Source: Zancudomyces culisetae HAW-14-8
Taxonomy: Eukaryota; Fungi; Kickxellomycota
NCBI GenBank assembly: GCA_052426225.1
Contig: JBNJNM010000012.1
Location: 2,418,001-2,482,000, forward strand
Direction: 5' to 3'
DNA: 64,000 nt
The notes beneath the pieces were generated by a model that searched no databases, was not told the origin of the DNA, and was given only the letters and a program-made list of their open reading frames with translations. Positions 38,836-64,000 of the stretch are shown piece by piece. A program made the position numbers and the translations under genes. How positions within the stretch are numbered: the first letter of the stretch is position 1; each line of letters opens with the position of its first letter.

Positions 38836-40089
38836 CTACTCCCTTTCAAAAATACCACACATTCCCATTCCTGTACCCATACACATTGAAATTGCTCCTA
38901 CTCTCTTATTTTGTCGTTTAAGTTCGGTCAAAAGTGTTGATACCAATCTGGCTCCAGTACATCCCAATGGATGTCCAAATGCAATTGCTCCTCCCTTTGG
39001 ATTCACTCTGTTTGGATCCAATCCAAGCTTCTCAATGCAGTACAATGCTTGTGATGCAAATGCTTCATTAAGTTCAACAACGTCCAAGTCATTGATAGTG
39101 ATTCCTGCCTTCTTAACTGCTTCTGGAATTGCATATGCTGGTCCAACTCCCATAATACTTGGTGGCACACCTACCACAGCCGAGGTGATAAACTTACCAA
39201 TGATTGGAAGTCCCAATTCTGTAGCCTTCTTACGCTTCATAAGCAATACTGCAGCTGCTCCATCTGATACTTGTGATGAGTTACCTGCTGTTGATGCACC
39301 ATCTGGTTTGAAAGCTGGTTTCAATGAACCAAGGCTTTGAAGAGTGGCATCGTGGCGGATTCCATCATCCTCTGATACAATTACTTCCAATACATTACCC
39401 TTAGCATCCTTGACTTTTGTTTTTACAGGGAGGATTTCTTCTTTGAAGAGACCGTTCTTTTGAGCATATGAGGCCTTCTGGTGAGATCTGAGAGCAAACT
39501 GGTCTTGCTTTTGACGGGAGACACCGAATTGGGTGGCAACGTTTTCTGAAGTGATACCCATTGGCAGCAGGCAATCCTCTACCAATGGATTTTCTAGCGA
39601 GCTTTCGTCACAATCTTCTCTCAATAGCTTGATTTTCTGAAAGTAACTGGTCATGCTTTCAACGCCAGCAGCTATTCCCACCTCTGTAGTTCCATCTCTG
39701 ATTGCCGAAGCAAGCTGGGTAACTGCTTGCAAACCACTTGCACAATGCCTGTTTATTGAAACGACGCTTGCTGAATCGGGAATTCCGGCATGCAACATGG
39801 CCATGCGTCCCAAAGCTACACCACCTCCTAATGTGTTTACGGTACCTATAACAAGCTCAGTAATTATCTTTGGATCAATCCCAGCCTGTTCAATAACACC
39901 GCTTATGATACAGTAGAGCAGACGTTCAACTTTTGTGTCTTTCAATCCACCCTTATATGCTCTTGTGATGGGTGTTCTGAAGGCAGAAACAATAACTACA
40001 TCCTCAGGATTTTTAAACCCTATTATAGTTTTTTTTGTTTTTTTGTTTGCAAAATGCTCGGACAACTGATCCAGTCTCTGTGTGGCCAT
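38836..40089 (-). CDS. POT1: Peroxisomal 3-ketoacyl-CoA thiolase, tandem copy B
   Basis: PTS2 RLDQLSEHF; NRHCASG; C-terminal ~245 aa identical to copy A. Confidence 0.93.
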   Translation of the reverse strand: MATQRLDQLSEHFANKKTKKTIIGFKNPEDVVIVSAFRTPITRAYKGGLKDTKVERLLYCIISGVIEQAGIDPKIITELVIGTVNTLGGGVALGRMAMLHAGIPDSASVVSINRHCASGLQAVTQLASAIRDGTTEVGIAAGVESMTSYFQKIKLLREDCDESSLENPLVEDCLLPMGITSENVATQFGVSRQKQDQFALRSHQKASYAQKNGLFKEEILPVKTKVKDAKGNVLEVIVSEDDGIRHDATLQSLGSLKPAFKPDGASTAGNSSQVSDGAAAVLLMKRKKATELGLPIIGKFITSAVVGVPPSIMGVGPAYAIPEAVKKAGITINDLDVVELNEAFASQALYCIEKLGLDPNRVNPKGGAIAFGHPLGCTGARLVSTLLTELKRQNKRVGAISMCMGTGMGMCGIFERE

Positions 40090-57092: not shown

Positions 57093-58103
57093 ATGGATCT
57101 GAAGAGCCTTATTTCTTTGCTGCTCTTTCAACTTTTTGTGGTAAATGGGGATCAGCAAGTAAAAAGAGATAACTCCAGTGAATCAATCAGTAAATTCGAC
57201 TTGACGTCCAACCAGCGGGTTGTTAATGGAGTGCCAGCCCTTATAAACGAGTTTCCCTACGCCGTTTTCATATATATCGACTTGGGAAGTTCAGGCGAGG
57301 TTTGTACAGGATCATTAATCTCTGACTCTGTGGTTGTTACCGCAGCACACTGTCTATTAAAAGACTTGAAAGAGCCTTATTCACCATCAAAATTTCTTGT
57401 CAGCGCGGGAAGTATAAAAAGCATTGATACGAATACAAACAGATTCAAAGTAAAAGCAACATATTCTCACCCAAAGTTTAATAAAAATTCTCTAGCGAAT
57501 GACATTGGTTTACTTGTACTTTCATCACCCGTTCCCAGCAGTATTGCGACTCCAGTTTCAATTTATGACGACGTTGTGGGGGATGGGATGAACGTTACTG
57601 CTGCGGGTTGGGGAGTTACTTCAAACAACGCCAATGCCAGCGCATCCAAGGTTTTAAATAAGGTTCCCCTCATTGTTTCCTCTTCTAGTACGTGTAAGAC
57701 GCTTAACCCATTTTGGAAAAATAATAACGACTACAGTATATGTACAGTAAATGTTAAAAACCAGGATACGTGTTACGGAGATTCAGGTGGGCCACTGACA
57801 TACATAGAAGACGGTGCTCATTTACTAGTTGGTCTGACAAGTATGGGGAATGCACCTGGAGATGATACAACATCCTCGTTATGTGGAGTGAATGGCGGCG
57901 CAGCTTATTACACACACGTGTTTTATTTTATTGACTGGATATCCCAGACAACAGGGATCAAAAAGGAGGATCTTTTGGATAAAACATCACGATCTAACCT
58001 TCAACCGCAGACTTCTGCTGCGACTCGGAAAGGATCACAAGTTTTCTTGCCTATTTCGTTCTCTTTATTATTCATTGCTTTTACTTTACTGCTATTTATG
58101 TAG
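57093..58103 (+). CDS. Secreted trypsin-like S1 serine protease with C-terminal hydrophobic, GPI-like tail
   Basis: Signal peptide, RVVNG, TAAHC, NDIGL, DTCYGDSGGP (Asp189, tryptic pocket). Confidence 0.93.
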   Translation: MDLKSLISLLLFQLFVVNGDQQVKRDNSSESISKFDLTSNQRVVNGVPALINEFPYAVFIYIDLGSSGEVCTGSLISDSVVVTAAHCLLKDLKEPYSPSKFLVSAGSIKSIDTNTNRFKVKATYSHPKFNKNSLANDIGLLVLSSPVPSSIATPVSIYDDVVGDGMNVTAAGWGVTSNNANASASKVLNKVPLIVSSSSTCKTLNPFWKNNNDYSICTVNVKNQDTCYGDSGGPLTYIEDGAHLLVGLTSMGNAPGDDTTSSLCGVNGGAAYYTHVFYFIDWISQTTGIKKEDLLDKTSRSNLQPQTSAATRKGSQVFLPISFSLLFIAFTLLLFM

Positions 58104-58205: not shown

Positions 58206-61200
58206 CTATTTAGCCACTGAAAGAGCTACAACTTGCATACAGTCAAAGACAATGTTCAGCTCTATCGTGTTGATTCCAATACGCTCAACCAGTTCTGCCA
58301 ACTTGTTATAAAATTTTACAGAAGCAGCTATATAGGTGTCATCGCTGGCTATGTCCTCAATCTCAATGTCAATTAGAGGCGCTGCAGCTCCTTTACTCCA
58401 AAGTTCCACATTGGAACCGTGTTGATCATTAAAACTTGTTATAGCTTTTATTGTTGCTTCTTTTGCGCACCATAGCATTGTAAAGCCTGATGCGATAGAG
58501 GATTGAGTCTTGCAATACTCTATTTCCTTTTTAGTAAAGTTTCGGGTGATAAAGTTTTCATTTTCCACATTTAGCGAGGATACTGGTTCAATATCAATAC
58601 CAATACCACATATCTGCTTTTTATCAATGTTCTTTATAATTTTATCAAGTGCAAGAACTGTATTATTTATAATCAAGTCATTGATAGATCCAGACTCGGG
58701 TTCGGTTATCTGGTCAAATCTGTTGAACGAATAAGTCTCAGATACCGGGTCAAACGAAACTCTAGCATTGGGATTCATATATACTAGCTCTTCCATTTCC
58801 TTGGAAAACGGAGGATCGGACTTTATTTTGACATGCTTTTTGAGCCCAGTTAAAGTGTTTTGGTAATATCTGTTAGCTTTGATCTGCCTTTGATTCCGTT
58901 TTTTCAAATATGACGCGTATTCGTGTCTATCTAGTGATGCTAGCAGATAATCTGGATGCACAACAATCATTTCACCGCAATCTTTAGACTTTCCATATGA
59001 TCTTAATATTCCTGCCTTAACCATGGGTCTCTTGTAGGATTCGTATGGGAAAAAAGTAAAGGTGTAGTCTTTATAATCGTTGGAAATGTTGTCAGAAATT
59101 CTATTCCCAGGAATGATCCCAGTGTTAATAGATTGGATAAGCCCAGTCAGCTCGATAACTGAAGATGCGCTTTTTGTGTGTCCAATAAGCCCCTTTTGTG
59201 AAACAACGGGGCAAATATTGCCAGGTGTTCTTCCCAAATAGTTAAACTGAATATCTGCTATTTTTAGCTCCATATGGTCCATACGACTTATTGAACTCGA
59301 ATACATGCTAACAACATCGATATCATTAATATCCAACCCAAAACAAGATAGAGCCCCTCTAATAGGAGAAATGGTTTTATCACTTCTCCAAAACTCATTT
59401 GTCCAGAAGCTTATTGCCTCTTTTCTTAATCTGTTTTCTTGATTTGATATGCTATTGATAACTTCTGTAATCAAATCCAGCTTACTTTGTGAGGTATTGC
59501 TGCTCAAAAATAAATCTCTGTCAGATACGAGACCATTTGATCCAAAATTATCAGTTTGGAAATATTCATCAAATCCCGTAGATGTAATGTAAGAGTACTC
59601 TTCGGTTGCCCATTTTTTGATCTCCAAAAGTCTTTTTTCTAGCTGGTCTTTCCGATAGCTGATATCTAAAATAGGGTTGGGCATATTTGTAATGGGATCA
59701 CATTCACGAGAATTGGATAGTACTCCGTACCCAACATATTCCCTATAGGTAGCATAACTTGATGTGTTGGTCTGGCAAAAGGCAATTATTGCATATATTG
59801 GCACACCCATTTCTAGTGCAGTCCTGGCAGACATTAGAACCATAGTTGATGAGCCGATACTTTCAACAAAACCATCGCTAGTATTTGTAAATGGCCGAAA
59901 ATGATCTTTTACAGTTCTTCCCGCCTTTTGTTCTTTAGATGCCGTCACTAGCTCTTTATTAAGGAAAAGTTCGAGGTTCATTTCCTCGTCTACATCATCT
60001 TGACCCCCAGCAATCATCACCTTTGCCTTGCCCATCTGAATACTCTCAACAGCAATCGAAACAGATGCTAATCCATTGGAATAGGATGTGCTTGGAATTT
60101 TTATAGGCCCGGCGGACGACAATAGCAGCAAGTTTATCCATCCCGACATTGATGAGGGAAATGTCTCTTGTAATATATCCTTTTGTACATCTTCGTCTCT
60201 TAGTCTCCCCAGACATGTTTCTAAAAATGACTCAACACCACCCACAAATGAGCCCACCGAATTTCCAACTTCAGTTAGATGTACGTATTTGTAGAATTCG
60301 TATGGATCCTCAATTCCAGCCCGCATTAACGAATCACATGTGGAAACTAGGGTCAGGAGAGTCAAATAATCTACTTGGTTAATGGTATCTGTGTCTATCC
60401 CATATCTTTTTGCCGACCATCCCTTTGGAAGTAATCCTACAGTGTTAGAGTCGATTTTAGTTGCCTTGGGAAAGTACAGTTTTGCTCCGGGCAAGAACTG
60501 TACAGACCACGTTTCGTCACCATTGCTCCAAATCTTTACCTTATCTTCATTTCGCAGTTTAAAGTGTTCGGCTTCCACCTGTGTCGTAATTATCGGATGC
60601 ATTTTTTCTTGGATTTCGATTTCCTGTATAGTGACTCGTTCATCTGGATTGTATCCACGCATTAACTCTGGGTCAATGTTTCTTATTCTGGAGTTTTGAA
60701 CAATCTTCATCTCATAAATACTCCTAATTCTTTTCTCTTCAATTGGTTGTTTGGTTTCACAGTCTATCCATCCATTATAATAGCGACCATCCTTTTGCTT
60801 TCCGTTGAAATATTCTATATATCCCATGATCCAAGCCAAGACAATGCAGCTTTCTGTAGATAAGTTTTCGTCAACTTCAAAATCCCATCTAGTTTCTGCA
60901 GTACCGTACGGAGTAACTTCACCATATCCAACTAAAACCACTGTTTTGTCCAGATCCAGCATATTCTTCATGTAGTTTAGATTTTCAAGCTCATCATACG
61001 TTTTGGTTTTAGGAAATTCCAGCCAAAGCTTAGACTGTGGGATAGCTTGGGTGGTTTTATATAGACGTTCCACGTTTTCTCCCTCAATCATATTGAAATC
61101 AAATGAGGTTTCCGCAACAATTTTCTTTTGCAACGAGCTCTGAAACATTAAGTTGTTTCTAATCTTAACGCATCTATCATTAAAGTCCATCATAATCCCG

Positions 61201-64000
61201 AACCCACCGCTAATGTCAACATACATGGGGCCGCTGTTTGATACTTGTGACAATCGCGGATGCAAGAGACCCATCACGTTAAGTGCAATCTCATCAGGCG
61301 AAAACGTCTTTCCTCCTTGTTTCTCCATTTCTTCCGCAACAATATCATTTTGGTTCATCAGTGATGTACCTCTTGCCCAACCCACAACTACACCAATTAT
61401 ATTTATGATTCCGCCCCATGATTCAGCTCTCCACTTATCAAATAACGTTTCAAGTCCGATTTTACTTTCGGCGTACAGACCATCGTATCCAAAGCCACCA
61501 TGATTTAGTGATAATGGTACCACTACTCTGGTAGGTCTGAAAACACTATTTAGCTCGTTCTTATTCTTTACAATTCTGCCAACCATCCTTATAATATTGA
61601 TAAGCATTGTACGATGACTCAATTCCGAGTAGGAATCTATGCAAGTGATATCCCTATTTATTTCTGACATCGCTGCAAACGGGATAAATAGATCCAAATC
61701 TAACCCAAGCCCTCCACTTGCCTTTGGTTTGTAAATAAAATCAACCAAGTTGTTAATATCAGTTTGTGAAGATTGATTAAACGGAACAACAGTTAGTGAA
61801 GATTTTTTAGACCCATGCTCCTTATAAACCTTTTCATACATCCTTATATTATCGTATTTGAAATTCGATGTTGTCGCAATGACGTTTGCACCAGATACTA
61901 GTAATGCCTTTACAAGAGATAAACCTATAGAATTCTTCCCACAACCTGTAACCAAAACGTTCTTACCACTATATGAAATACCATGTTTTGAAATATCCAA
62001 TATAGCAGCCATATACACTGAAGTCGAATCAGGGTCATAGTTCCATATTTCATGTGAAAACCTGGTTCGAAGGTGAAGAAACGGAATTCTGTCTTTTATG
62101 AGAATTTGTTTGGAAAATTGTTGAAAATCGTCAAACTCTCTCATATCTTTTTCAAGTTGACTAGTTTTATCGGACTGATCAGTGTGTGCTTCCCTTTTTC
62201 TAGTTGCCAGTTCTGACAGCAAGGCTGAAATTCTATTAAGGTCCAATGTCTTTTCACCACCACCACTATTACTATTTATAAAATCAAAAATTTCTTCAAC
62301 CTTTAAGCCACTCGATATATCACTATCTTGGGTTCGACTAGCCAGATTAGGTATGCCCTTTACCATTGATTTCAAATAATCAACACAGCTATTTACTCCG
62401 GCTCTTGGAGTTTCTGTATATTGAATTTCCCCCTTGTTGCTAACAGTTGTCCTTGGACCCACAAATTTCTCCAAACCCTTATACAATGGATCTAATTCAA
62501 CATTTGCCTCGCAAACATTTACTAGATCCCTCAATAGCTCAATCTTTGCTGCCAACTCCTTATTTTCATGGGTTAGACTGTTTTCTTGTTTTAATATCTG
62601 CAATTTGTATTTTAAAAAGCCAACCAACTGAATGCTAGAACAGTTTACAAGATGTCTGAACTCGTCCATTAGAGTTTCCTTTATTTTTTCGCTATTCATT
62701 TCCACCATTCTATAGAAAAGCGAGTCTGCCCGTGCCAAAGACCAGTTCCAGTATGAGTCAAAGACTCTAACTTTTTCTTCCTCAAAAATCGATTTTATTC
62801 CTTCAATAAACACCTCTCCCTGCTCACTAAGTAAATAATCAATCTGAGCTTGAACTTCACCCAGTTTGTTTGTTGTTTCCTCCAACGCTTCGTGGCTCTT
62901 GCTATAGCTTACACCGAAATAATCGTTCAAAGATTCAAGATGAGAATTCAATAATGTATCTTGCTTTTCCACTAGACTGGTGAATTCTTTTGAATTTATT
63001 ACTGTGGTACTTTTTCCTGCACTAGAAGACACACTTAGTTGAGAATATTGTATTCCAAATATTTTAGCATATTGATTGGCAACTATTTCCAACCACGAAT
63101 TCATGTCCTTTTCATTTGCCAATCGGTTTTCAGGCTCAAATGTAGTTCCCAGCAAAAGCAAACAGTCAGCACGCAATGGACCTAGTCCGTACTTTTTGTT
63201 TAGCATTTCCTTGATCTTGGGAATGGTAAATCCACCCGGCATCTTTGAGTTTACCAACTTTGACACCCTTACAGATGAAAATGGTCCCAGTCCGCCAGAA
63301 GAGTTATTAAGTTGGCCAAAAAGCTCAATCAGTGGCATTTCCTCAGCCTTATCAGGTAGTTGATTTTGAAACTCCTTTTGTAAATCACTGATTATTTCAT
63401 TTTGCATTGCTGATTTGCCATTGACTAGGTCCTTAATAGATTTGGAATCGGAAATATCAATGTAACTTTTTTTCAGCTTTTGAGCAACTATAGAGGTAAT
63501 GATTTCACGAGCTGTGATTTTTACATCTTCTATTTGTGCAGCTACTCCTTGAGATCTATGCCCATCGCCAGAACTGTTTTCGAGAGCAGGGCTGTAATGT
63601 AGATCAGCTGGTGTTGCTGTTGGTATTTCAGCTGGTTTGGTGACTTGTTCACTTGAACGAGACGTTGAAGTCTGTGTGTCTGCAGCTTCACTTTGTTTGT
63701 CGGTAGAGAGCTTTTTACTGGATATTGGAAGAGAGGCGTTTGATTCTTGAGGTTCGTTGGATTCATTTTGTCTGTTGGCGTGATAAATGAATTCTTTATC
63801 GCTAATACAATGTAGTATAGTACGCTGGATTCCCTCCAAATCGTCTTGATCCTTGAACTTGGCATGTATCGTTCTTGTTGCCATTCCAACCAACACGGAA
63901 CTGGGCCCGACCTCAATAGCTTGTTCAATATTACAGTCTCCGAATATGGTATTTTGAGTTTCAATCCATTGAACAGGGCTGGCAAATTGATATGACAACA
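58206..64000 (-). CDS. FAS2: Fungal type I fatty acid synthase, alpha-type region (ACP-KR-KS-PPT), 5' end outside window; KS catalytic residues degenerate
   Basis: YQFASPVQWIETQ, ACP GKSAMQNEI, KR TGCGKNSIG/YAESK, PPT GIDIE/WCAKEA; KS reads GPIKIPSTSYSN and VSMYSSS. Confidence 0.93.
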   Translation of the reverse strand, partial: LSYQFASPVQWIETQNTIFGDCNIEQAIEVGPSSVLVGMATRTIHAKFKDQDDLEGIQRTILHCISDKEFIYHANRQNESNEPQESNASLPISSKKLSTDKQSEAADTQTSTSRSSEQVTKPAEIPTATPADLHYSPALENSSGDGHRSQGVAAQIEDVKITAREIITSIVAQKLKKSYIDISDSKSIKDLVNGKSAMQNEIISDLQKEFQNQLPDKAEEMPLIELFGQLNNSSGGLGPFSSVRVSKLVNSKMPGGFTIPKIKEMLNKKYGLGPLRADCLLLLGTTFEPENRLANEKDMNSWLEIVANQYAKIFGIQYSQLSVSSSAGKSTTVINSKEFTSLVEKQDTLLNSHLESLNDYFGVSYSKSHEALEETTNKLGEVQAQIDYLLSEQGEVFIEGIKSIFEEEKVRVFDSYWNWSLARADSLFYRMVEMNSEKIKETLMDEFRHLVNCSSIQLVGFLKYKLQILKQENSLTHENKELAAKIELLRDLVNVCEANVELDPLYKGLEKFVGPRTTVSNKGEIQYTETPRAGVNSCVDYLKSMVKGIPNLASRTQDSDISSGLKVEEIFDFINSNSGGGEKTLDLNRISALLSELATRKREAHTDQSDKTSQLEKDMREFDDFQQFSKQILIKDRIPFLHLRTRFSHEIWNYDPDSTSVYMAAILDISKHGISYSGKNVLVTGCGKNSIGLSLVKALLVSGANVIATTSNFKYDNIRMYEKVYKEHGSKKSSLTVVPFNQSSQTDINNLVDFIYKPKASGGLGLDLDLFIPFAAMSEINRDITCIDSYSELSHRTMLINIIRMVGRIVKNKNELNSVFRPTRVVVPLSLNHGGFGYDGLYAESKIGLETLFDKWRAESWGGIINIIGVVVGWARGTSLMNQNDIVAEEMEKQGGKTFSPDEIALNVMGLLHPRLSQVSNSGPMYVDISGGFGIMMDFNDRCVKIRNNLMFQSSLQKKIVAETSFDFNMIEGENVERLYKTTQAIPQSKLWLEFPKTKTYDELENLNYMKNMLDLDKTVVLVGYGEVTPYGTAETRWDFEVDENLSTESCIVLAWIMGYIEYFNGKQKDGRYYNGWIDCETKQPIEEKRIRSIYEMKIVQNSRIRNIDPELMRGYNPDERVTIQEIEIQEKMHPIITTQVEAEHFKLRNEDKVKIWSNGDETWSVQFLPGAKLYFPKATKIDSNTVGLLPKGWSAKRYGIDTDTINQVDYLTLLTLVSTCDSLMRAGIEDPYEFYKYVHLTEVGNSVGSFVGGVESFLETCLGRLRDEDVQKDILQETFPSSMSGWINLLLLSSAGPIKIPSTSYSNGLASVSIAVESIQMGKAKVMIAGGQDDVDEEMNLELFLNKELVTASKEQKAGRTVKDHFRPFTNTSDGFVESIGSSTMVLMSARTALEMGVPIYAIIAFCQTNTSSYATYREYVGYGVLSNSRECDPITNMPNPILDISYRKDQLEKRLLEIKKWATEEYSYITSTGFDEYFQTDNFGSNGLVSDRDLFLSSNTSQSKLDLITEVINSISNQENRLRKEAISFWTNEFWRSDKTISPIRGALSCFGLDINDIDVVSMYSSSISRMDHMELKIADIQFNYLGRTPGNICPVVSQKGLIGHTKSASSVIELTGLIQSINTGIIPGNRISDNISNDYKDYTFTFFPYESYKRPMVKAGILRSYGKSKDCGEMIVVHPDYLLASLDRHEYASYLKKRNQRQIKANRYYQNTLTGLKKHVKIKSDPPFSKEMEELVYMNPNARVSFDPVSETYSFNRFDQITEPESGSINDLIINNTVLALDKIIKNIDKKQICGIGIDIEPVSSLNVENENFITRNFTKKEIEYCKTQSSIASGFTMLWCAKEATIKAITSFNDQHGSNVELWSKGAAAPLIDIEIEDIASDDTYIAASVKFYNKLAELVERIGINTIELNIVFDCMQVVALSVAK

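What the first reader, a model, noticed from the sequence alone, without database searches (positions are those of the whole stretch)
58206..64000. Fatty acid synthase with an intact ORF but a catalytically dead ketoacyl synthase
Seen: 1930 uninterrupted codons, with the ACP serine (GKSAMQNE, codon 63411-63413), KR (TGCGKNSIG, YAESK) and PPT (GIDIE, WCAKEA) conserved. Aligned by eye to yeast Fas2, the KS motif GPIKTPVGACAT reads GPIKIPSTSYSN (catalytic Cys to Tyr, codon 60081-60083). ASFHGTST reads VSMYSSSI (His to Tyr, codon 59301-59303), and SFGFGQ reads SYGKSK. Only the second His (GHTK) remains. Known: the Cys-His-His triad is required for condensation. Inference: erosion confined to the KS active site in an otherwise preserved gene suggests a pseudo-KS subunit. 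It could be a structural or regulatory partner in mixed FAS barrels, a chain-length-factor-like module, or a reducing/acyl-carrier/PPT donor, and it implies an active paralog elsewhere.
Basis: partly seen in the sequence, partly recalled or inferred. Interest (0 to 1): 0.85.

Follow-up and report, generated by a model that had tools for sequence, protein, structure and literature searches.

The report
Fatty acid synthase paralogue that cannot condense
The gut fungus Zancudomyces culisetae keeps a full-length 4033-residue fatty acid synthase copy whose chain-starting and chain-extending sites are destroyed although the gene is still under selection, so it is probably a non-condensing partner of an active sister enzyme.

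Summary
The KS catalytic Cys (60081-60083) and first His (59301-59303) are Tyr, and GFGQ reads GKSK. An independent public assembly of the same species shows the same changes.

The window ORF is only the C-terminal 1930 residues of a 4033-residue single-chain fungal FAS (AT-ER-DH-MPT-ACP-KR-KS-PPT) of Zancudomyces culisetae. Erosion is not confined to KS. The AT site outside the window is also dead (GHSQG reads GFGCG), and the PPT has lost its C-terminal Ser/His motif.

The gene is a lineage-specific duplicate of a Harpellales-specific second FAS (clade B). Its active sister lies on contig 11. Codons 488-946 and 1013-2423 (ER to ACP) are about 99-100% identical in DNA to that sister, which indicates gene conversion. 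The rest is saturated at synonymous sites.

No stop occurs in 2163 paralogue-specific codons. KS dN is 0.55 where dS is saturated (2.8 in KR), within-species dN/dS is 0.22-0.27, and both dead domains still model as FAS folds. These argue for a maintained pseudoenzyme.

The sister's PPT lacks the catalytic Glu and Lys but keeps the Ser/His motif, a complementary pattern. Co-assembly into mixed barrels is my inference. The scan's first-stage notes had flagged the same KS and AT loss, here and on contig 16.

The parts
58206..64000 (-). C-terminal 1930 codons plus stop (58206-58208) of a 4033-codon single-chain fungal-type FAS. The whole CDS is G000:C12:2476209-2488307 and the start Met lies outside the window.
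63039..64000 (-). 3' end of the gene-conversion tract (end of MPT, linker, ACP). It is 98-100% identical in DNA to the contig-11 paralogue. The tract ends 3 codons after the end of the ACP Pfam match.
63048..63530 (-). ACP domain (PF18325). The phosphopantetheine Ser codon is 63411-63413.
62355..62969 (-). FAS type I helical domain (PF18314). It is paralogue-specific and, with the adjoining ACP and linker segments, carries most of the within-species amino-acid differences.
60948..61997 (-). Ketoreductase. The glycine motif TGCGKNSIG and the Ser (61509-61511), Tyr and Lys (YAESK) are kept, and 74 of 86 family-invariant columns are kept.
58719..60947 (-). Ketoacyl synthase domain with the fold retained and the active site destroyed.
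60081..60083 (-). Tyr codon (tat) at the position of the KS nucleophilic Cys.
59301..59303 (-). Tyr codon at the position of the first KS His (HGTST reads YSSSI).
59178..59195 (-). Retained KS Lys (59193-59195) and second His (59178-59180) in QKGLIGHTK.
58983..58997 (-). The KS loop FGFGQ reads YGKSK.
58209..58607 (-). AcpS-type PPT domain. The Asp/Glu motif (GIGIDIE), the catalytic Glu (58458-58460) and Lys (58446-58448) are kept. The C-terminal Ser-x-Ser-His strand is lost, with His replaced by Phe at 58245-58247.

Best explanation
**What the gene is (shown).** It is a Zancudomyces-lineage duplicate, here called FAS-B2, of a second, fast-evolving fungal-type FAS found only in Harpellales (clade B). 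It encodes one 4033-residue chain with the order AT-ER-DH-MPT-ACP-KR-KS-PPT.

**What is lost and what is kept (shown).**
- The two sites needed to start and extend a chain are destroyed. In AT, GHSQG reads GFGCG and FGGQG reads FDGYIS. In KS, Cys and the first His are both Tyr and GFGQ reads GKSK.
- The reading frame is intact.
- The AT and KS folds are retained in models.
- The ER, DH, MPT, ACP and KR motifs are kept.
- The metal-binding and catalytic half of the PPT site is kept.
- Codons 488-946 and 1013-2423 are held near-identical to the active sister gene FAS-B1 on contig 11 by gene conversion.
- The paralogue-specific parts evolve under purifying selection.

**How it most likely works (inferred).**
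- The protein is a non-condensing subunit that pairs with FAS-B1 through the KS dimer and central wheel, giving mixed barrels.
- Its ACP, identical to the sister's, is served by the sister's AT and KS.
- Its own KR, ER, DH and MPT contribute to the cycle.
- Its PPT supplies the Asp/Glu/Lys half-site that FAS-B1 has lost, while FAS-B1 supplies the Ser/His half-site that FAS-B2 has lost.
- Fewer KS and AT sites per MPT site could also shift product release towards shorter chains.
For: **Anatomy and paralogues**
- The dead KS is shown, and the dead AT.
- Clade B is ((C12,C11),(Furculomyces P0003, Smittium mucronatum P0122)). Support for the C12+C11 pair is 92/93 on KR-KS and 99/98 on AT.

**Gene conversion**
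- The conversion tracts have sharp edges.
- Both Illumina contigs of the public assembly break inside the tract, as expected for a true two-copy repeat.

**Selection**
- No stop occurs in 2163 paralogue-specific codons. Since 4.86% of single-base changes would create a stop, only 2% neutral divergence would give 6.3 expected stops (P = 0.002).
- Against contig 11, KS dN is 0.55 and KR dN is 0.35, while dS is 2.8 or not computable.
- Within the species, KR-KS-PPT has dN/dS of 0.22-0.27, from 4 non-synonymous and 4-6 synonymous differences.
- The KR-KS branch is 0.74 for C12 against 0.58 for the active sister.
- C12 keeps 144 of 213 family-invariant KS columns and 74 of 86 KR columns. Its private KS losses cluster in five active-site loops.

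**Folds**
- The AlphaFold AT model has pLDDT 81.7 and pTM 0.86. It matches FAS beta chains at TM 0.75-0.77 with only 21-22% identity.
- The KS model matches FAS alpha at E 1e-58 and TM 0.69-0.71. Its low-confidence segments fall on the eroded loops.

**PPT complementarity**
- C12 keeps the Asp/Glu motif and the catalytic Glu and Lys but has His replaced by Phe. Contig 11 has Asp to Glu, Glu to Thr and Lys to Asn, keeps SISH, and no longer matches PF01648.
- In AcpS the CoA pyrophosphate is held by the Ser/Asp of one protomer and by Asp8/Glu57/Lys61 of its neighbour (PMC3447402).
- The fungal PPT is active only as a multimer, on a KS-dimer platform (PMC6972935).
- KS, AT and MPT are the chain-length-controlling domains (PMC5353594).
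Against:
- Co-assembly with FAS-B1 is inferred only.
- The two genes are on different contigs and are not clustered. Neighbours are housekeeping genes.
- FAS-B1 might have its ACP activated by another PPT. A weaker PF01648 match exists at G000:C7:908557 (26.6 bits, just over the 25-bit cut-off), and three Coemansia FASs in the motif table lack the PPT region altogether, with many more lacking a PF01648 annotation.
- Loss of the PPT His may only weaken rather than abolish activity. In human PPT, H111A keeps about half of kcat.
- The within-species selection estimates rest on few differences, and whole-gene dN/dS between the two copies is 0.43.
- No orthologue exists outside this species, so branch-specific dN/dS could not be computed.
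- The gene lies about 36-49 kb from a telomere, a region prone to duplicated and decaying genes.
Confidence: 0.55

Rival explanations
1. Stand-alone homomeric enzyme without condensation. FAS-B2 would form its own barrel and use MPT, ACP, KR, DH and ER to process acyl or 3-ketoacyl units loaded from CoA esters. Alternatively it would serve only as a PPT or holo-ACP donor, with no need for FAS-B1.
For: All motifs of MPT, ACP, KR, DH and ER are intact. The PPT keeps its Mg-binding and catalytic residues. The whole chain is under selection, not only KS and PPT. The gene is not linked to FAS-B1.
Against: No precedent was found for a fungal FAS barrel working without condensation. The PPT lacks the Ser/His strand that binds the CoA phosphates. 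The complementary losses in the sister's PPT, and repeated conversion of ER to ACP between the two genes, are better explained by a shared assembly.
Confidence: 0.15
2. Non-functional duplicate on its way to decay. It would be a subtelomeric copy whose open frame partly reflects repair by gene conversion and partly chance, with inactivation tolerated because FAS-B1 and FAS-A do the work.
For: The location is subtelomeric and there is a second 99.5%-identical copy or haplotig. There are no expression data. No orthologue exists elsewhere. The whole-gene dN/dS between copies is 0.43, and the helical and linker parts reach 0.4-0.6. The AT branch is twice as long as the sister's.
Against: Conversion does not cover the 2163 paralogue-specific codons, which carry no stop or frameshift although 2% neutral change predicts about 6 stops. 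The active-site motifs are replaced at dozens of positions, so inactivation is old. KS dN is 0.55 against a saturated dS. The KR-KS rate is similar to that of the active sister. Three sequenced copies all keep the frame. The dead AT domain still models confidently as an AT fold at 22% identity.
Confidence: 0.1
3. KS/CLF-like or KSQ-like module. The dead KS would act as a chain-length factor or a malonyl decarboxylase beside an active KS.
For: It is a KS paralogue without the Cys that probably dimerises with an active KS. This parallels the actinorhodin KS/CLF pair and the FabF-like pair reported for a ladderane producer (paper listed).
Against: The Cys position is Tyr, not Gln. One of the two His residues needed for decarboxylation is also Tyr, and the GFGQ loop is gone. 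The AT is dead too, which a pure chain-length-factor role does not explain.
Confidence: 0.1
4. Assembly or sequencing artefact, such as a chimeric contig or miscalled bases.
For: A 5.7-kb near-identical repeat shared with contig 11 could mislead an assembler.
Against: The independent assembly GCA_001969505.1 carries the same 1765 C-terminal residues, the same Tyr codons and the same downstream trypsin gene. Two copies in this assembly agree. The differences from active FASs involve hundreds of residues, not single bases.
Confidence: 0.01

Closest known systems
Fungal type I fatty acid synthase (yeast Fas1/Fas2; single-chain form of early-diverging fungi)
   Same: It has the same eight-domain order, 37-40% identity to solved alpha chains in the KS part, and a full-length match at E = 0. 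The ER, DH, MPT, ACP and KR motifs are kept.
   Different: The AT nucleophile and oxyanion motifs are lost. The KS Cys and first His are lost, so it cannot prime or condense. The PPT C-terminal Ser/His strand is lost.
FAS-B1, the sister gene on contig 11 of the same genome (G000:C11:5160891-5173082, 4064 residues)
   Same: It is the closest relative. Codons 488-946 and 1013-2423 are about 99-100% identical in DNA. The two share a clade-B origin.
   Different: FAS-B1 keeps GHSQG, the KS Cys-His-His triad and GFGQ. Its PPT has lost the catalytic Glu and Lys and no longer matches PF01648.
Chain-length factor (KS-beta) of type II polyketide synthases and non-elongating KS0 domains of trans-AT PKSs
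   Same: These are condensation-incompetent KS paralogues or domains kept for a structural or partner role beside an active KS.
   Different: A chain-length factor has Gln at the Cys position and acts in a small dissociated dimer. KS0 keeps the Cys. Here the dead KS sits inside a 4033-residue barrel-forming chain, has Tyr at two triad positions, and is accompanied by a dead AT. This comparison rests on general knowledge of those families.
Sfp-type (group II) phosphopantetheinyl transferases
   Same: In those enzymes two AcpS-like halves have divided the work. One half binds the CoA phosphates and the other carries the Mg-binding and catalytic residues (PMC3447402 and PMC2148441). The PPT domains of contig 11 and contig 12 show the same complementary pattern at motif level.
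   Different: Here the two halves would sit on two separate megasynthase chains rather than in one polypeptide, and their pairing is not shown.
Secondary-metabolite FAS pairs of Ascomycota (HexA/HexB, StcJ/StcK)
   Same: These are extra fungal-type FAS paralogues besides the housekeeping enzyme.
   Different: Those enzymes are catalytically complete and lie in biosynthetic clusters. This gene has no cluster context and is catalytically incomplete. This comparison rests on general knowledge.

Membership tests
Fungal type I FAS (structural membership) | Domain order AT-ER-DH-MPT-ACP-KR-KS-PPT with FAS-specific helical and meander inserts | tested here: met
   Pfam hits for FAS_N, SAT, Fas1-AflB-like_hel, FAS_meander, MaoC, Acyl_transf_1, Fas_alpha_ACP, FAS_I_H, adh_short, ketoacyl-synt N and C, and ACPS. 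Full-length match to solved FAS alpha chains at E = 0.
Fungal type I FAS (catalytic membership) | KS Cys-His-His triad | tested here: not met
   Cys is Tyr and the first His is Tyr. Only the Lys and the second His remain.
Fungal type I FAS (catalytic membership) | AT nucleophile elbow GHSxG and oxyanion FGGQG | tested here: not met
   These read GFGCG and FDGYIS, with an 11-residue gap in the loop before the PFHS motif. All 22 other sequences in the table that cover the Ser motif keep GHSQG.
Fungal type I FAS (catalytic membership) | ACP Ser; KR Ser-Tyr-Lys; MPT Ser/Arg/His; DH His; ER GGGH and GGHH motifs | tested here: met
   All are present. ER, DH, MPT and ACP are identical to the active sister because of gene conversion.
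Fungal type I FAS (catalytic membership) | Complete AcpS-type PPT site (Asp/Glu, Lys-Glu...Lys, C-terminal Ser-x-Ser-His) | tested here: inconclusive
   The first two motifs are kept, with PF01648 at 50.7 bits. The C-terminal SISH reads NIVF. The effect on activity is unknown.
Processed or unitary pseudogene | Frame-breaking mutations | tested here: not met
   4033 open codons in two copies plus 1765 in a third assembly. About 6 stops are expected after only 2% neutral divergence.
Processed or unitary pseudogene | dN/dS near 1 | tested here: not met
   KS dN is 0.55 and KR dN 0.35, against dS of at least 2.8. Within-species KR-KS-PPT gives 0.22-0.27 from few sites.
Processed or unitary pseudogene | No expression | not testable with these tools
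KS / chain-length-factor heterodimer partner | Gln (or another decarboxylation-competent residue) at the Cys position with both His residues kept | tested here: not met
   Tyr at the Cys position and Tyr at the first His.
KS / chain-length-factor heterodimer partner | Physical heterodimer with an active KS | not testable with these tools
   No reads, proteomics or complex modelling were available.
Split (Sfp-like) PPT site across two chains | Complementary retention of the two half-site motifs in the two partners | tested here: met
   The C12-only loss is His to Phe. The C11-only losses are Gly, Gly, Asp to Glu, Glu to Thr and Lys to Asn. The half-site assignment follows PMC3447402.
Split (Sfp-like) PPT site across two chains | Activity only when both partners are present | not testable with these tools
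   Needs an enzyme assay.

The most novel reading that the evidence does not exclude
Z. culisetae would run an obligate two-paralogue FAS. FAS-B1 (AT and KS active, PPT catalytic residues dead) and FAS-B2 (AT and KS dead, PPT catalytic residues alive, PPT Ser/His strand dead) would heterodimerise through their KS domains. They would build one composite Sfp-like PPT site across the two chains to activate their identical ACPs. They would then close into mixed barrels whose halved KS and AT content relative to MPT tunes chain length. Gene conversion would be tolerated only in the parts that must stay interchangeable (ER, DH, MPT, ACP). It would be excluded from the parts that have divided the labour (AT, a 66-codon helical island, and helical-KR-KS-PPT).
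Probability: 0.25. Interest if true: 0.85.

Novelty: new variant of a known kind. Interest (0 to 1): 0.64.

Why it matters
Fungal FAS is a textbook homo-oligomeric machine in which every chain carries a full set of active sites. I found no report of a natural full-length paralogue that has lost exactly the priming and condensing sites yet stays under selection.

If the paralogue co-assembles with its active sister, it would be a natural experiment in three things:
- how many KS and AT sites a barrel needs;
- whether an ACP can be served by a neighbouring chain's KS and AT;
- how site stoichiometry sets chain length, which engineers currently change by mutagenesis.

The complementary decay of the two PPT domains would also replay, on two separate chains, the step that turned trimeric AcpS into pseudo-dimeric Sfp-type transferases.

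The mosaic of near-identical and saturated segments is a clean example of domain-bounded gene conversion inside one gene.

Tried and rejected
- **Synonymous rates.** dS against the contig-11 sister is saturated, so exact dN/dS could not be computed for AT, KS or PPT.
- **Orthologues.** An exhaustive profile-free search found no orthologue outside this species. The best non-self hit is the sister type at 41% identity, so no branch-specific dN/dS was possible.
- **Frameshift in the canonical gene.** A third database search, meant to see whether the frameshift in the contig-21 FAS is also present in the public assembly, returned no Z. culisetae protein. That question stays open.
- **Literature.** Searches for a dead-KS fungal FAS, for Harpellales or Kickxellomycotina FAS paralogues, and for heteromultimeric FAS complementation gave nothing relevant. 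One search failed on a term that was too long.
- It was redone with alignment-column numbers only.
- **Biosynthetic cluster.** This context was rejected because the neighbours are trypsin, Utp6, RNA cyclase, DnaJ and a thiolase.
- **Another Cys or His in the active site.** This was rejected at sequence level because the motif alignment has no gaps and no Cys lies near the elbow. The tools give no coordinates, so it could not be tested on a structure.
Full report
**1.

- The minus-strand ORF 58206..63998 is open for 1930 codons and runs off the window.
Tyr (tat) is at 60081-60083 inside IKIPSTSYSNGL, Tyr is at 59301-59303 inside VSMYSSSI, and the ACP Ser is at 63411-63413.
- A HMMER alignment to the solved Pichia pastoris FAS alpha chain 7bc4_A pairs the motifs as follows: GPIKTPVGACAT with GPIKIPSTSYSN, SFHGTST with SMYSSSI, GHPK with GHTK, and SFGFGQ with SYGKSK.
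- Pfam finds Fas_alpha_ACP, FAS_I_H, adh_short, both ketoacyl-synthase halves and ACPS. The whole piece matches solved FAS alpha chains at E = 0.

**2. Organism and the whole gene**

- The best database hit, at 100% over the scored KS region, is a partial 'fatty acid synthase subunit alpha' of Zancudomyces culisetae (P0001). This is a Harpellales gut fungus of mosquito larvae.
- In the window's own 27.1-Mb assembly the ORF continues upstream to 4078 open codons, or 4033 from the first Met, at G000:C12:2476209-2488307.
- It is a single-chain beta-alpha FAS, as in other early-diverging fungi.
- The gene lies about 36-49 kb from a (TTAGGG)n telomere. Its neighbours are housekeeping genes, namely trypsin, Utp6, RNA cyclase, DnaJ and a thiolase. 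There is no biosynthetic cluster.

**3. Paralogues in the genome**

- **Contig 12** carries this gene.
- **Contig 16** carries a 4035-codon copy. The CDS differs at about 0.3% of bases. The 78-kb contig is colinear with the contig-12 subtelomere over about 74 kb at 97.7-99.5% identity. It may be a haplotig or a segmental duplicate, and I cannot tell which.
- **Contig 11** carries a 4064-codon gene with an intact AT (GHSQG) and an intact KS (Cys, His, His, GFGQ).
- **Contig 21** carries a canonical-looking FAS with every motif intact but one 1-base frameshift inside MPT.
- The only other KS in the genome looks like the mitochondrial type.

**4. Erosion is not confined to KS**

A 24-sequence motif table gives the state of each domain.

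| Domain | State in the contig-12 and contig-16 copies |
|---|---|
| AT | Dead. FGGQG reads FDGYIS, GHSQG reads GFGCG, and 11 residues are missing in the loop before PFHS. |
| ER, DH, MPT, ACP | Intact. |
| KR | Intact (glycine motif, Ser, Tyr, Lys). |
| KS | Dead. |
| PPT | Mixed. GIGIDIE and WCAKEA..K are kept, but the C-terminal SISH strand reads NIVF. |

No other sequence in the table that covers those motifs shows the AT changes, and none shows the KS changes. The 60 best homologues and about 147 representatives from an exhaustive search of 1.84 billion proteins add only two other deviants:
- P0149, a FAS-alpha-like protein with Cys replaced by Ala, sits in an NRPS/P450 cluster of an unnamed Logan assembly.
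- P0228 is a 746-residue Mycena fragment whose His motifs are off.

**5. Origin**

- Trees of the AT part, the middle part and the KR-KS part all give two Harpellales FAS clades.
- Clade A is canonical and contains contig 21, Smittium species and Furculomyces P0004.
- Clade B is fast-evolving and has the form ((contig 12, contig 11),(Furculomyces P0003, Smittium mucronatum P0122)). P0122 was named.
- The contig-12/contig-11 pair has support 92/93 on KR-KS and 99/98 on AT. Forcing contig 11 together with the other clade-B genes is rejected on AT (AU p = 0.004) but not on KR-KS (p = 0.11).
- The dead gene is therefore a Zancudomyces-lineage duplicate of the clade-B FAS. I call it FAS-B2, and its sister on contig 11 FAS-B1.
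- No orthologue exists elsewhere. The next-best hit in the exhaustive search is the sister type at 41% identity.

**6. Mosaic gene conversion**

- At DNA level, contig-12 codons 488-946 and 1013-2423 are about 99-100% identical to contig 11.
- Codons 1-487, a 66-codon island (947-1012, inside the Fas1 helical domain PF08354) and codons 2424-4033 are only 33-60% identical. The edges are sharp.
- The 3' edge lies three codons after the end of the ACP Pfam match. In the window the tract is 63039-64000, and 58206-63038 is paralogue-specific.
- Both Illumina contigs of the public assembly break inside the tract, as expected for a real two-copy repeat.

**7. Is it a pseudogene?** Several lines say no.

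- *Open frame.* The 2163 paralogue-specific codons carry no stop. Since 4.86% of single-base changes would create one, 2% neutral divergence predicts 6.3 stops (P = 0.002) and 10% predicts 31.
- *Age of inactivation.* The losses of family-invariant columns that are private to contig 12 number 43 in KS and 16 in AT. The KS losses cluster in five active-site loops. The sister's private losses are scattered and many are conservative. Inactivation is therefore old, far more than 2% neutral change ago.
- *Long-term rates.* Against the sister, dN is 0.35 (KR), 0.55 (KS) and 0.63 (AT), while dS is 2.8 or not computable.
- *Branch lengths.* The KR-KS branch is 0.74 for FAS-B2 and 0.58 for the active FAS-B1. 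Only AT is clearly faster (1.61 against 0.77).
- *Invariant columns kept.* FAS-B2 keeps 74 of 86 in KR and 144 of 213 in KS. The sister keeps 78 and 164.
- *Within the species.* Among contig 12, contig 16 and the public assembly, KR-KS-PPT shows dN/dS of 0.22-0.27, from 4 non-synonymous and 4-6 synonymous differences. The ACP-helical-linker segment shows 0.4-0.6. The counts are small.
- *Folds.* The AlphaFold AT model has pLDDT 81.7 and pTM 0.86. It matches FAS beta chains at TM 0.75-0.77 with only 21-22% identity. The KS model has pLDDT 69 and matches FAS alpha chains at E 1e-58 and TM about 0.7. Its low-confidence stretches coincide with the eroded loops.

**8. A complementary pattern in the PPT domains**

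- The PPT of FAS-B1 has a 9-residue insertion at the Gly-x-Asp motif. It also has Asp to Glu, loss of the second acidic residue, and KEA..K changed to KTA..N. It no longer matches PF01648, but it keeps SISHTD.
- FAS-B2 shows the reverse pattern.
- In AcpS-type enzymes the active site lies between protomers. In the Vibrio cholerae structure the CoA pyrophosphate is held by Ser111/Asp112 of one chain and by Asp8, Glu57 and Lys61 of the neighbouring chain. The two domains of Sfp-type enzymes correspond to two adjacent AcpS monomers (PMC3447402; PMC2148441).
- In human PPT, replacing the equivalent Asp, Glu or Lys lowers kcat about a thousand-fold. Replacing the His mainly weakens binding.
- The yeast FAS PPT is active only as a multimer, and the KS dimer is the platform on which the ACP is pantetheinylated (PMC6972935).
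- A FAS-B1/FAS-B2 KS heterodimer would therefore bring together one complete PPT site. This is inference from motifs. FAS-B1 could instead be served by another PPT, since a weaker PF01648 match exists at G000:C7:908557. Three Coemansia FASs in the motif table lack the PPT region altogether, and many more carry no PF01648 annotation.

**9. Most likely mechanism**

*Shown:*
- The chain cannot load acetyl or condense.
- It is otherwise complete.
- It is under selection.
- It is kept identical to its active sister from ER to ACP.

*Inferred:*
- It co-assembles with FAS-B1 through the KS dimer and wheel.
- Its ACP uses the sister's AT and KS.
- It contributes KR, ER, DH and MPT, and the catalytic half of the PPT site.
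- KS, AT and MPT are the domains that set chain length in yeast FAS (PMC5353594). Mixed barrels with fewer KS and AT sites per MPT could therefore release shorter products.

*Rivals:* a stand-alone non-condensing enzyme, a decaying duplicate, and a chain-length-factor-like module. The last is disfavoured because the Cys position is Tyr and one His is gone.

**10. What could not be done**

There is no RNA or read-level evidence, and expression is the main gap.
- The frameshift in the canonical contig-21 FAS could not be checked in the public assembly.

**11. Novelty**

- I found no paper describing a fungal FAS paralogue with dead KS and AT, or the clade-B FAS of Harpellales.
- The kind of thing is known, namely an inactive catalytic domain kept as scaffold, or a KS-like partner without Cys. 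This setting and combination appear new.
- First-stage notes of this scan had already flagged the same KS and AT loss on this stretch and on the contig-16 copy. I reached the AT result independently.

Noticed in passing
G000:C21:1242921-1254904 (+), break near C21:1249020: The canonical clade-A FAS has every catalytic motif intact but is split into two overlapping ORFs by a 1-base deletion inside MPT (FHSSFLL | AGVGPFRNF). It could be an assembly error or a very young inactivation of the housekeeping FAS.
   Followed up: partly
G000:C11:5160891-5173082 (-), C-terminal 200 residues: The active sister FAS-B1 has a degenerate PPT. The Gly-x-Asp motif carries a 9-residue insertion, KEA..K reads KTA..N, and there is no PF01648 match, only a faint 4PPT_N match (E 0.39) on its SISH strand.
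   Followed up: partly
contig-12 CDS codons 947-1012 (outside the window; G000:C12 about 2485270-2485470): A 66-codon island inside the Fas1 helical domain escaped the gene conversion that homogenised everything around it. It may contact a paralogue-specific domain.
   Followed up: partly
G000:C16:4003-78116 versus G000:C12:2435957-2510560: A 78-kb contig is colinear with the contig-12 subtelomere at 97.7-99.5% identity and carries a second intact copy of the dead FAS. Contig 12 ends in (TTAGGG)n. Whether this is a haplotig or a segmental duplicate is undecided.
   Followed up: partly
L019:10001-14485 (Logan SRR30710947 contig 4276), protein P0149: A 1494-residue FAS-alpha-like protein with Ala at the KS Cys position (both His kept) sits in a cluster with NRPS genes, a P450, a 4HBT thioesterase, an aminotransferase and an AMP-binding enzyme. 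It is a second, unrelated case of a Cys-less FAS-type KS.
   Followed up: partly
proteins P0009, P0016, P0048 and many other Coemansia hits: Kickxellales carry many FAS paralogues. P0009, P0016 and P0048 are all gaps in the PPT columns of the motif table, and many further Coemansia hits have no PF01648 annotation, so ACP activation by a separate PPT may be common in this subphylum.
   Followed up: no
protein P0228 (Mycena maculata, 746 residues): This FAS alpha fragment keeps the KS Cys motif, but its two His motifs do not align (AVQQDKHA, SLLGPSKG). It may be a mispredicted gene model or a pseudogene.
   Followed up: no
window 38836-40089 (-) and 57093-58103 (+): A thiolase gene lies 18 kb downstream of the FAS and a secreted-type trypsin lies 100 bases downstream. 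The trypsin neighbour is the same in the public assembly.
   Followed up: partly
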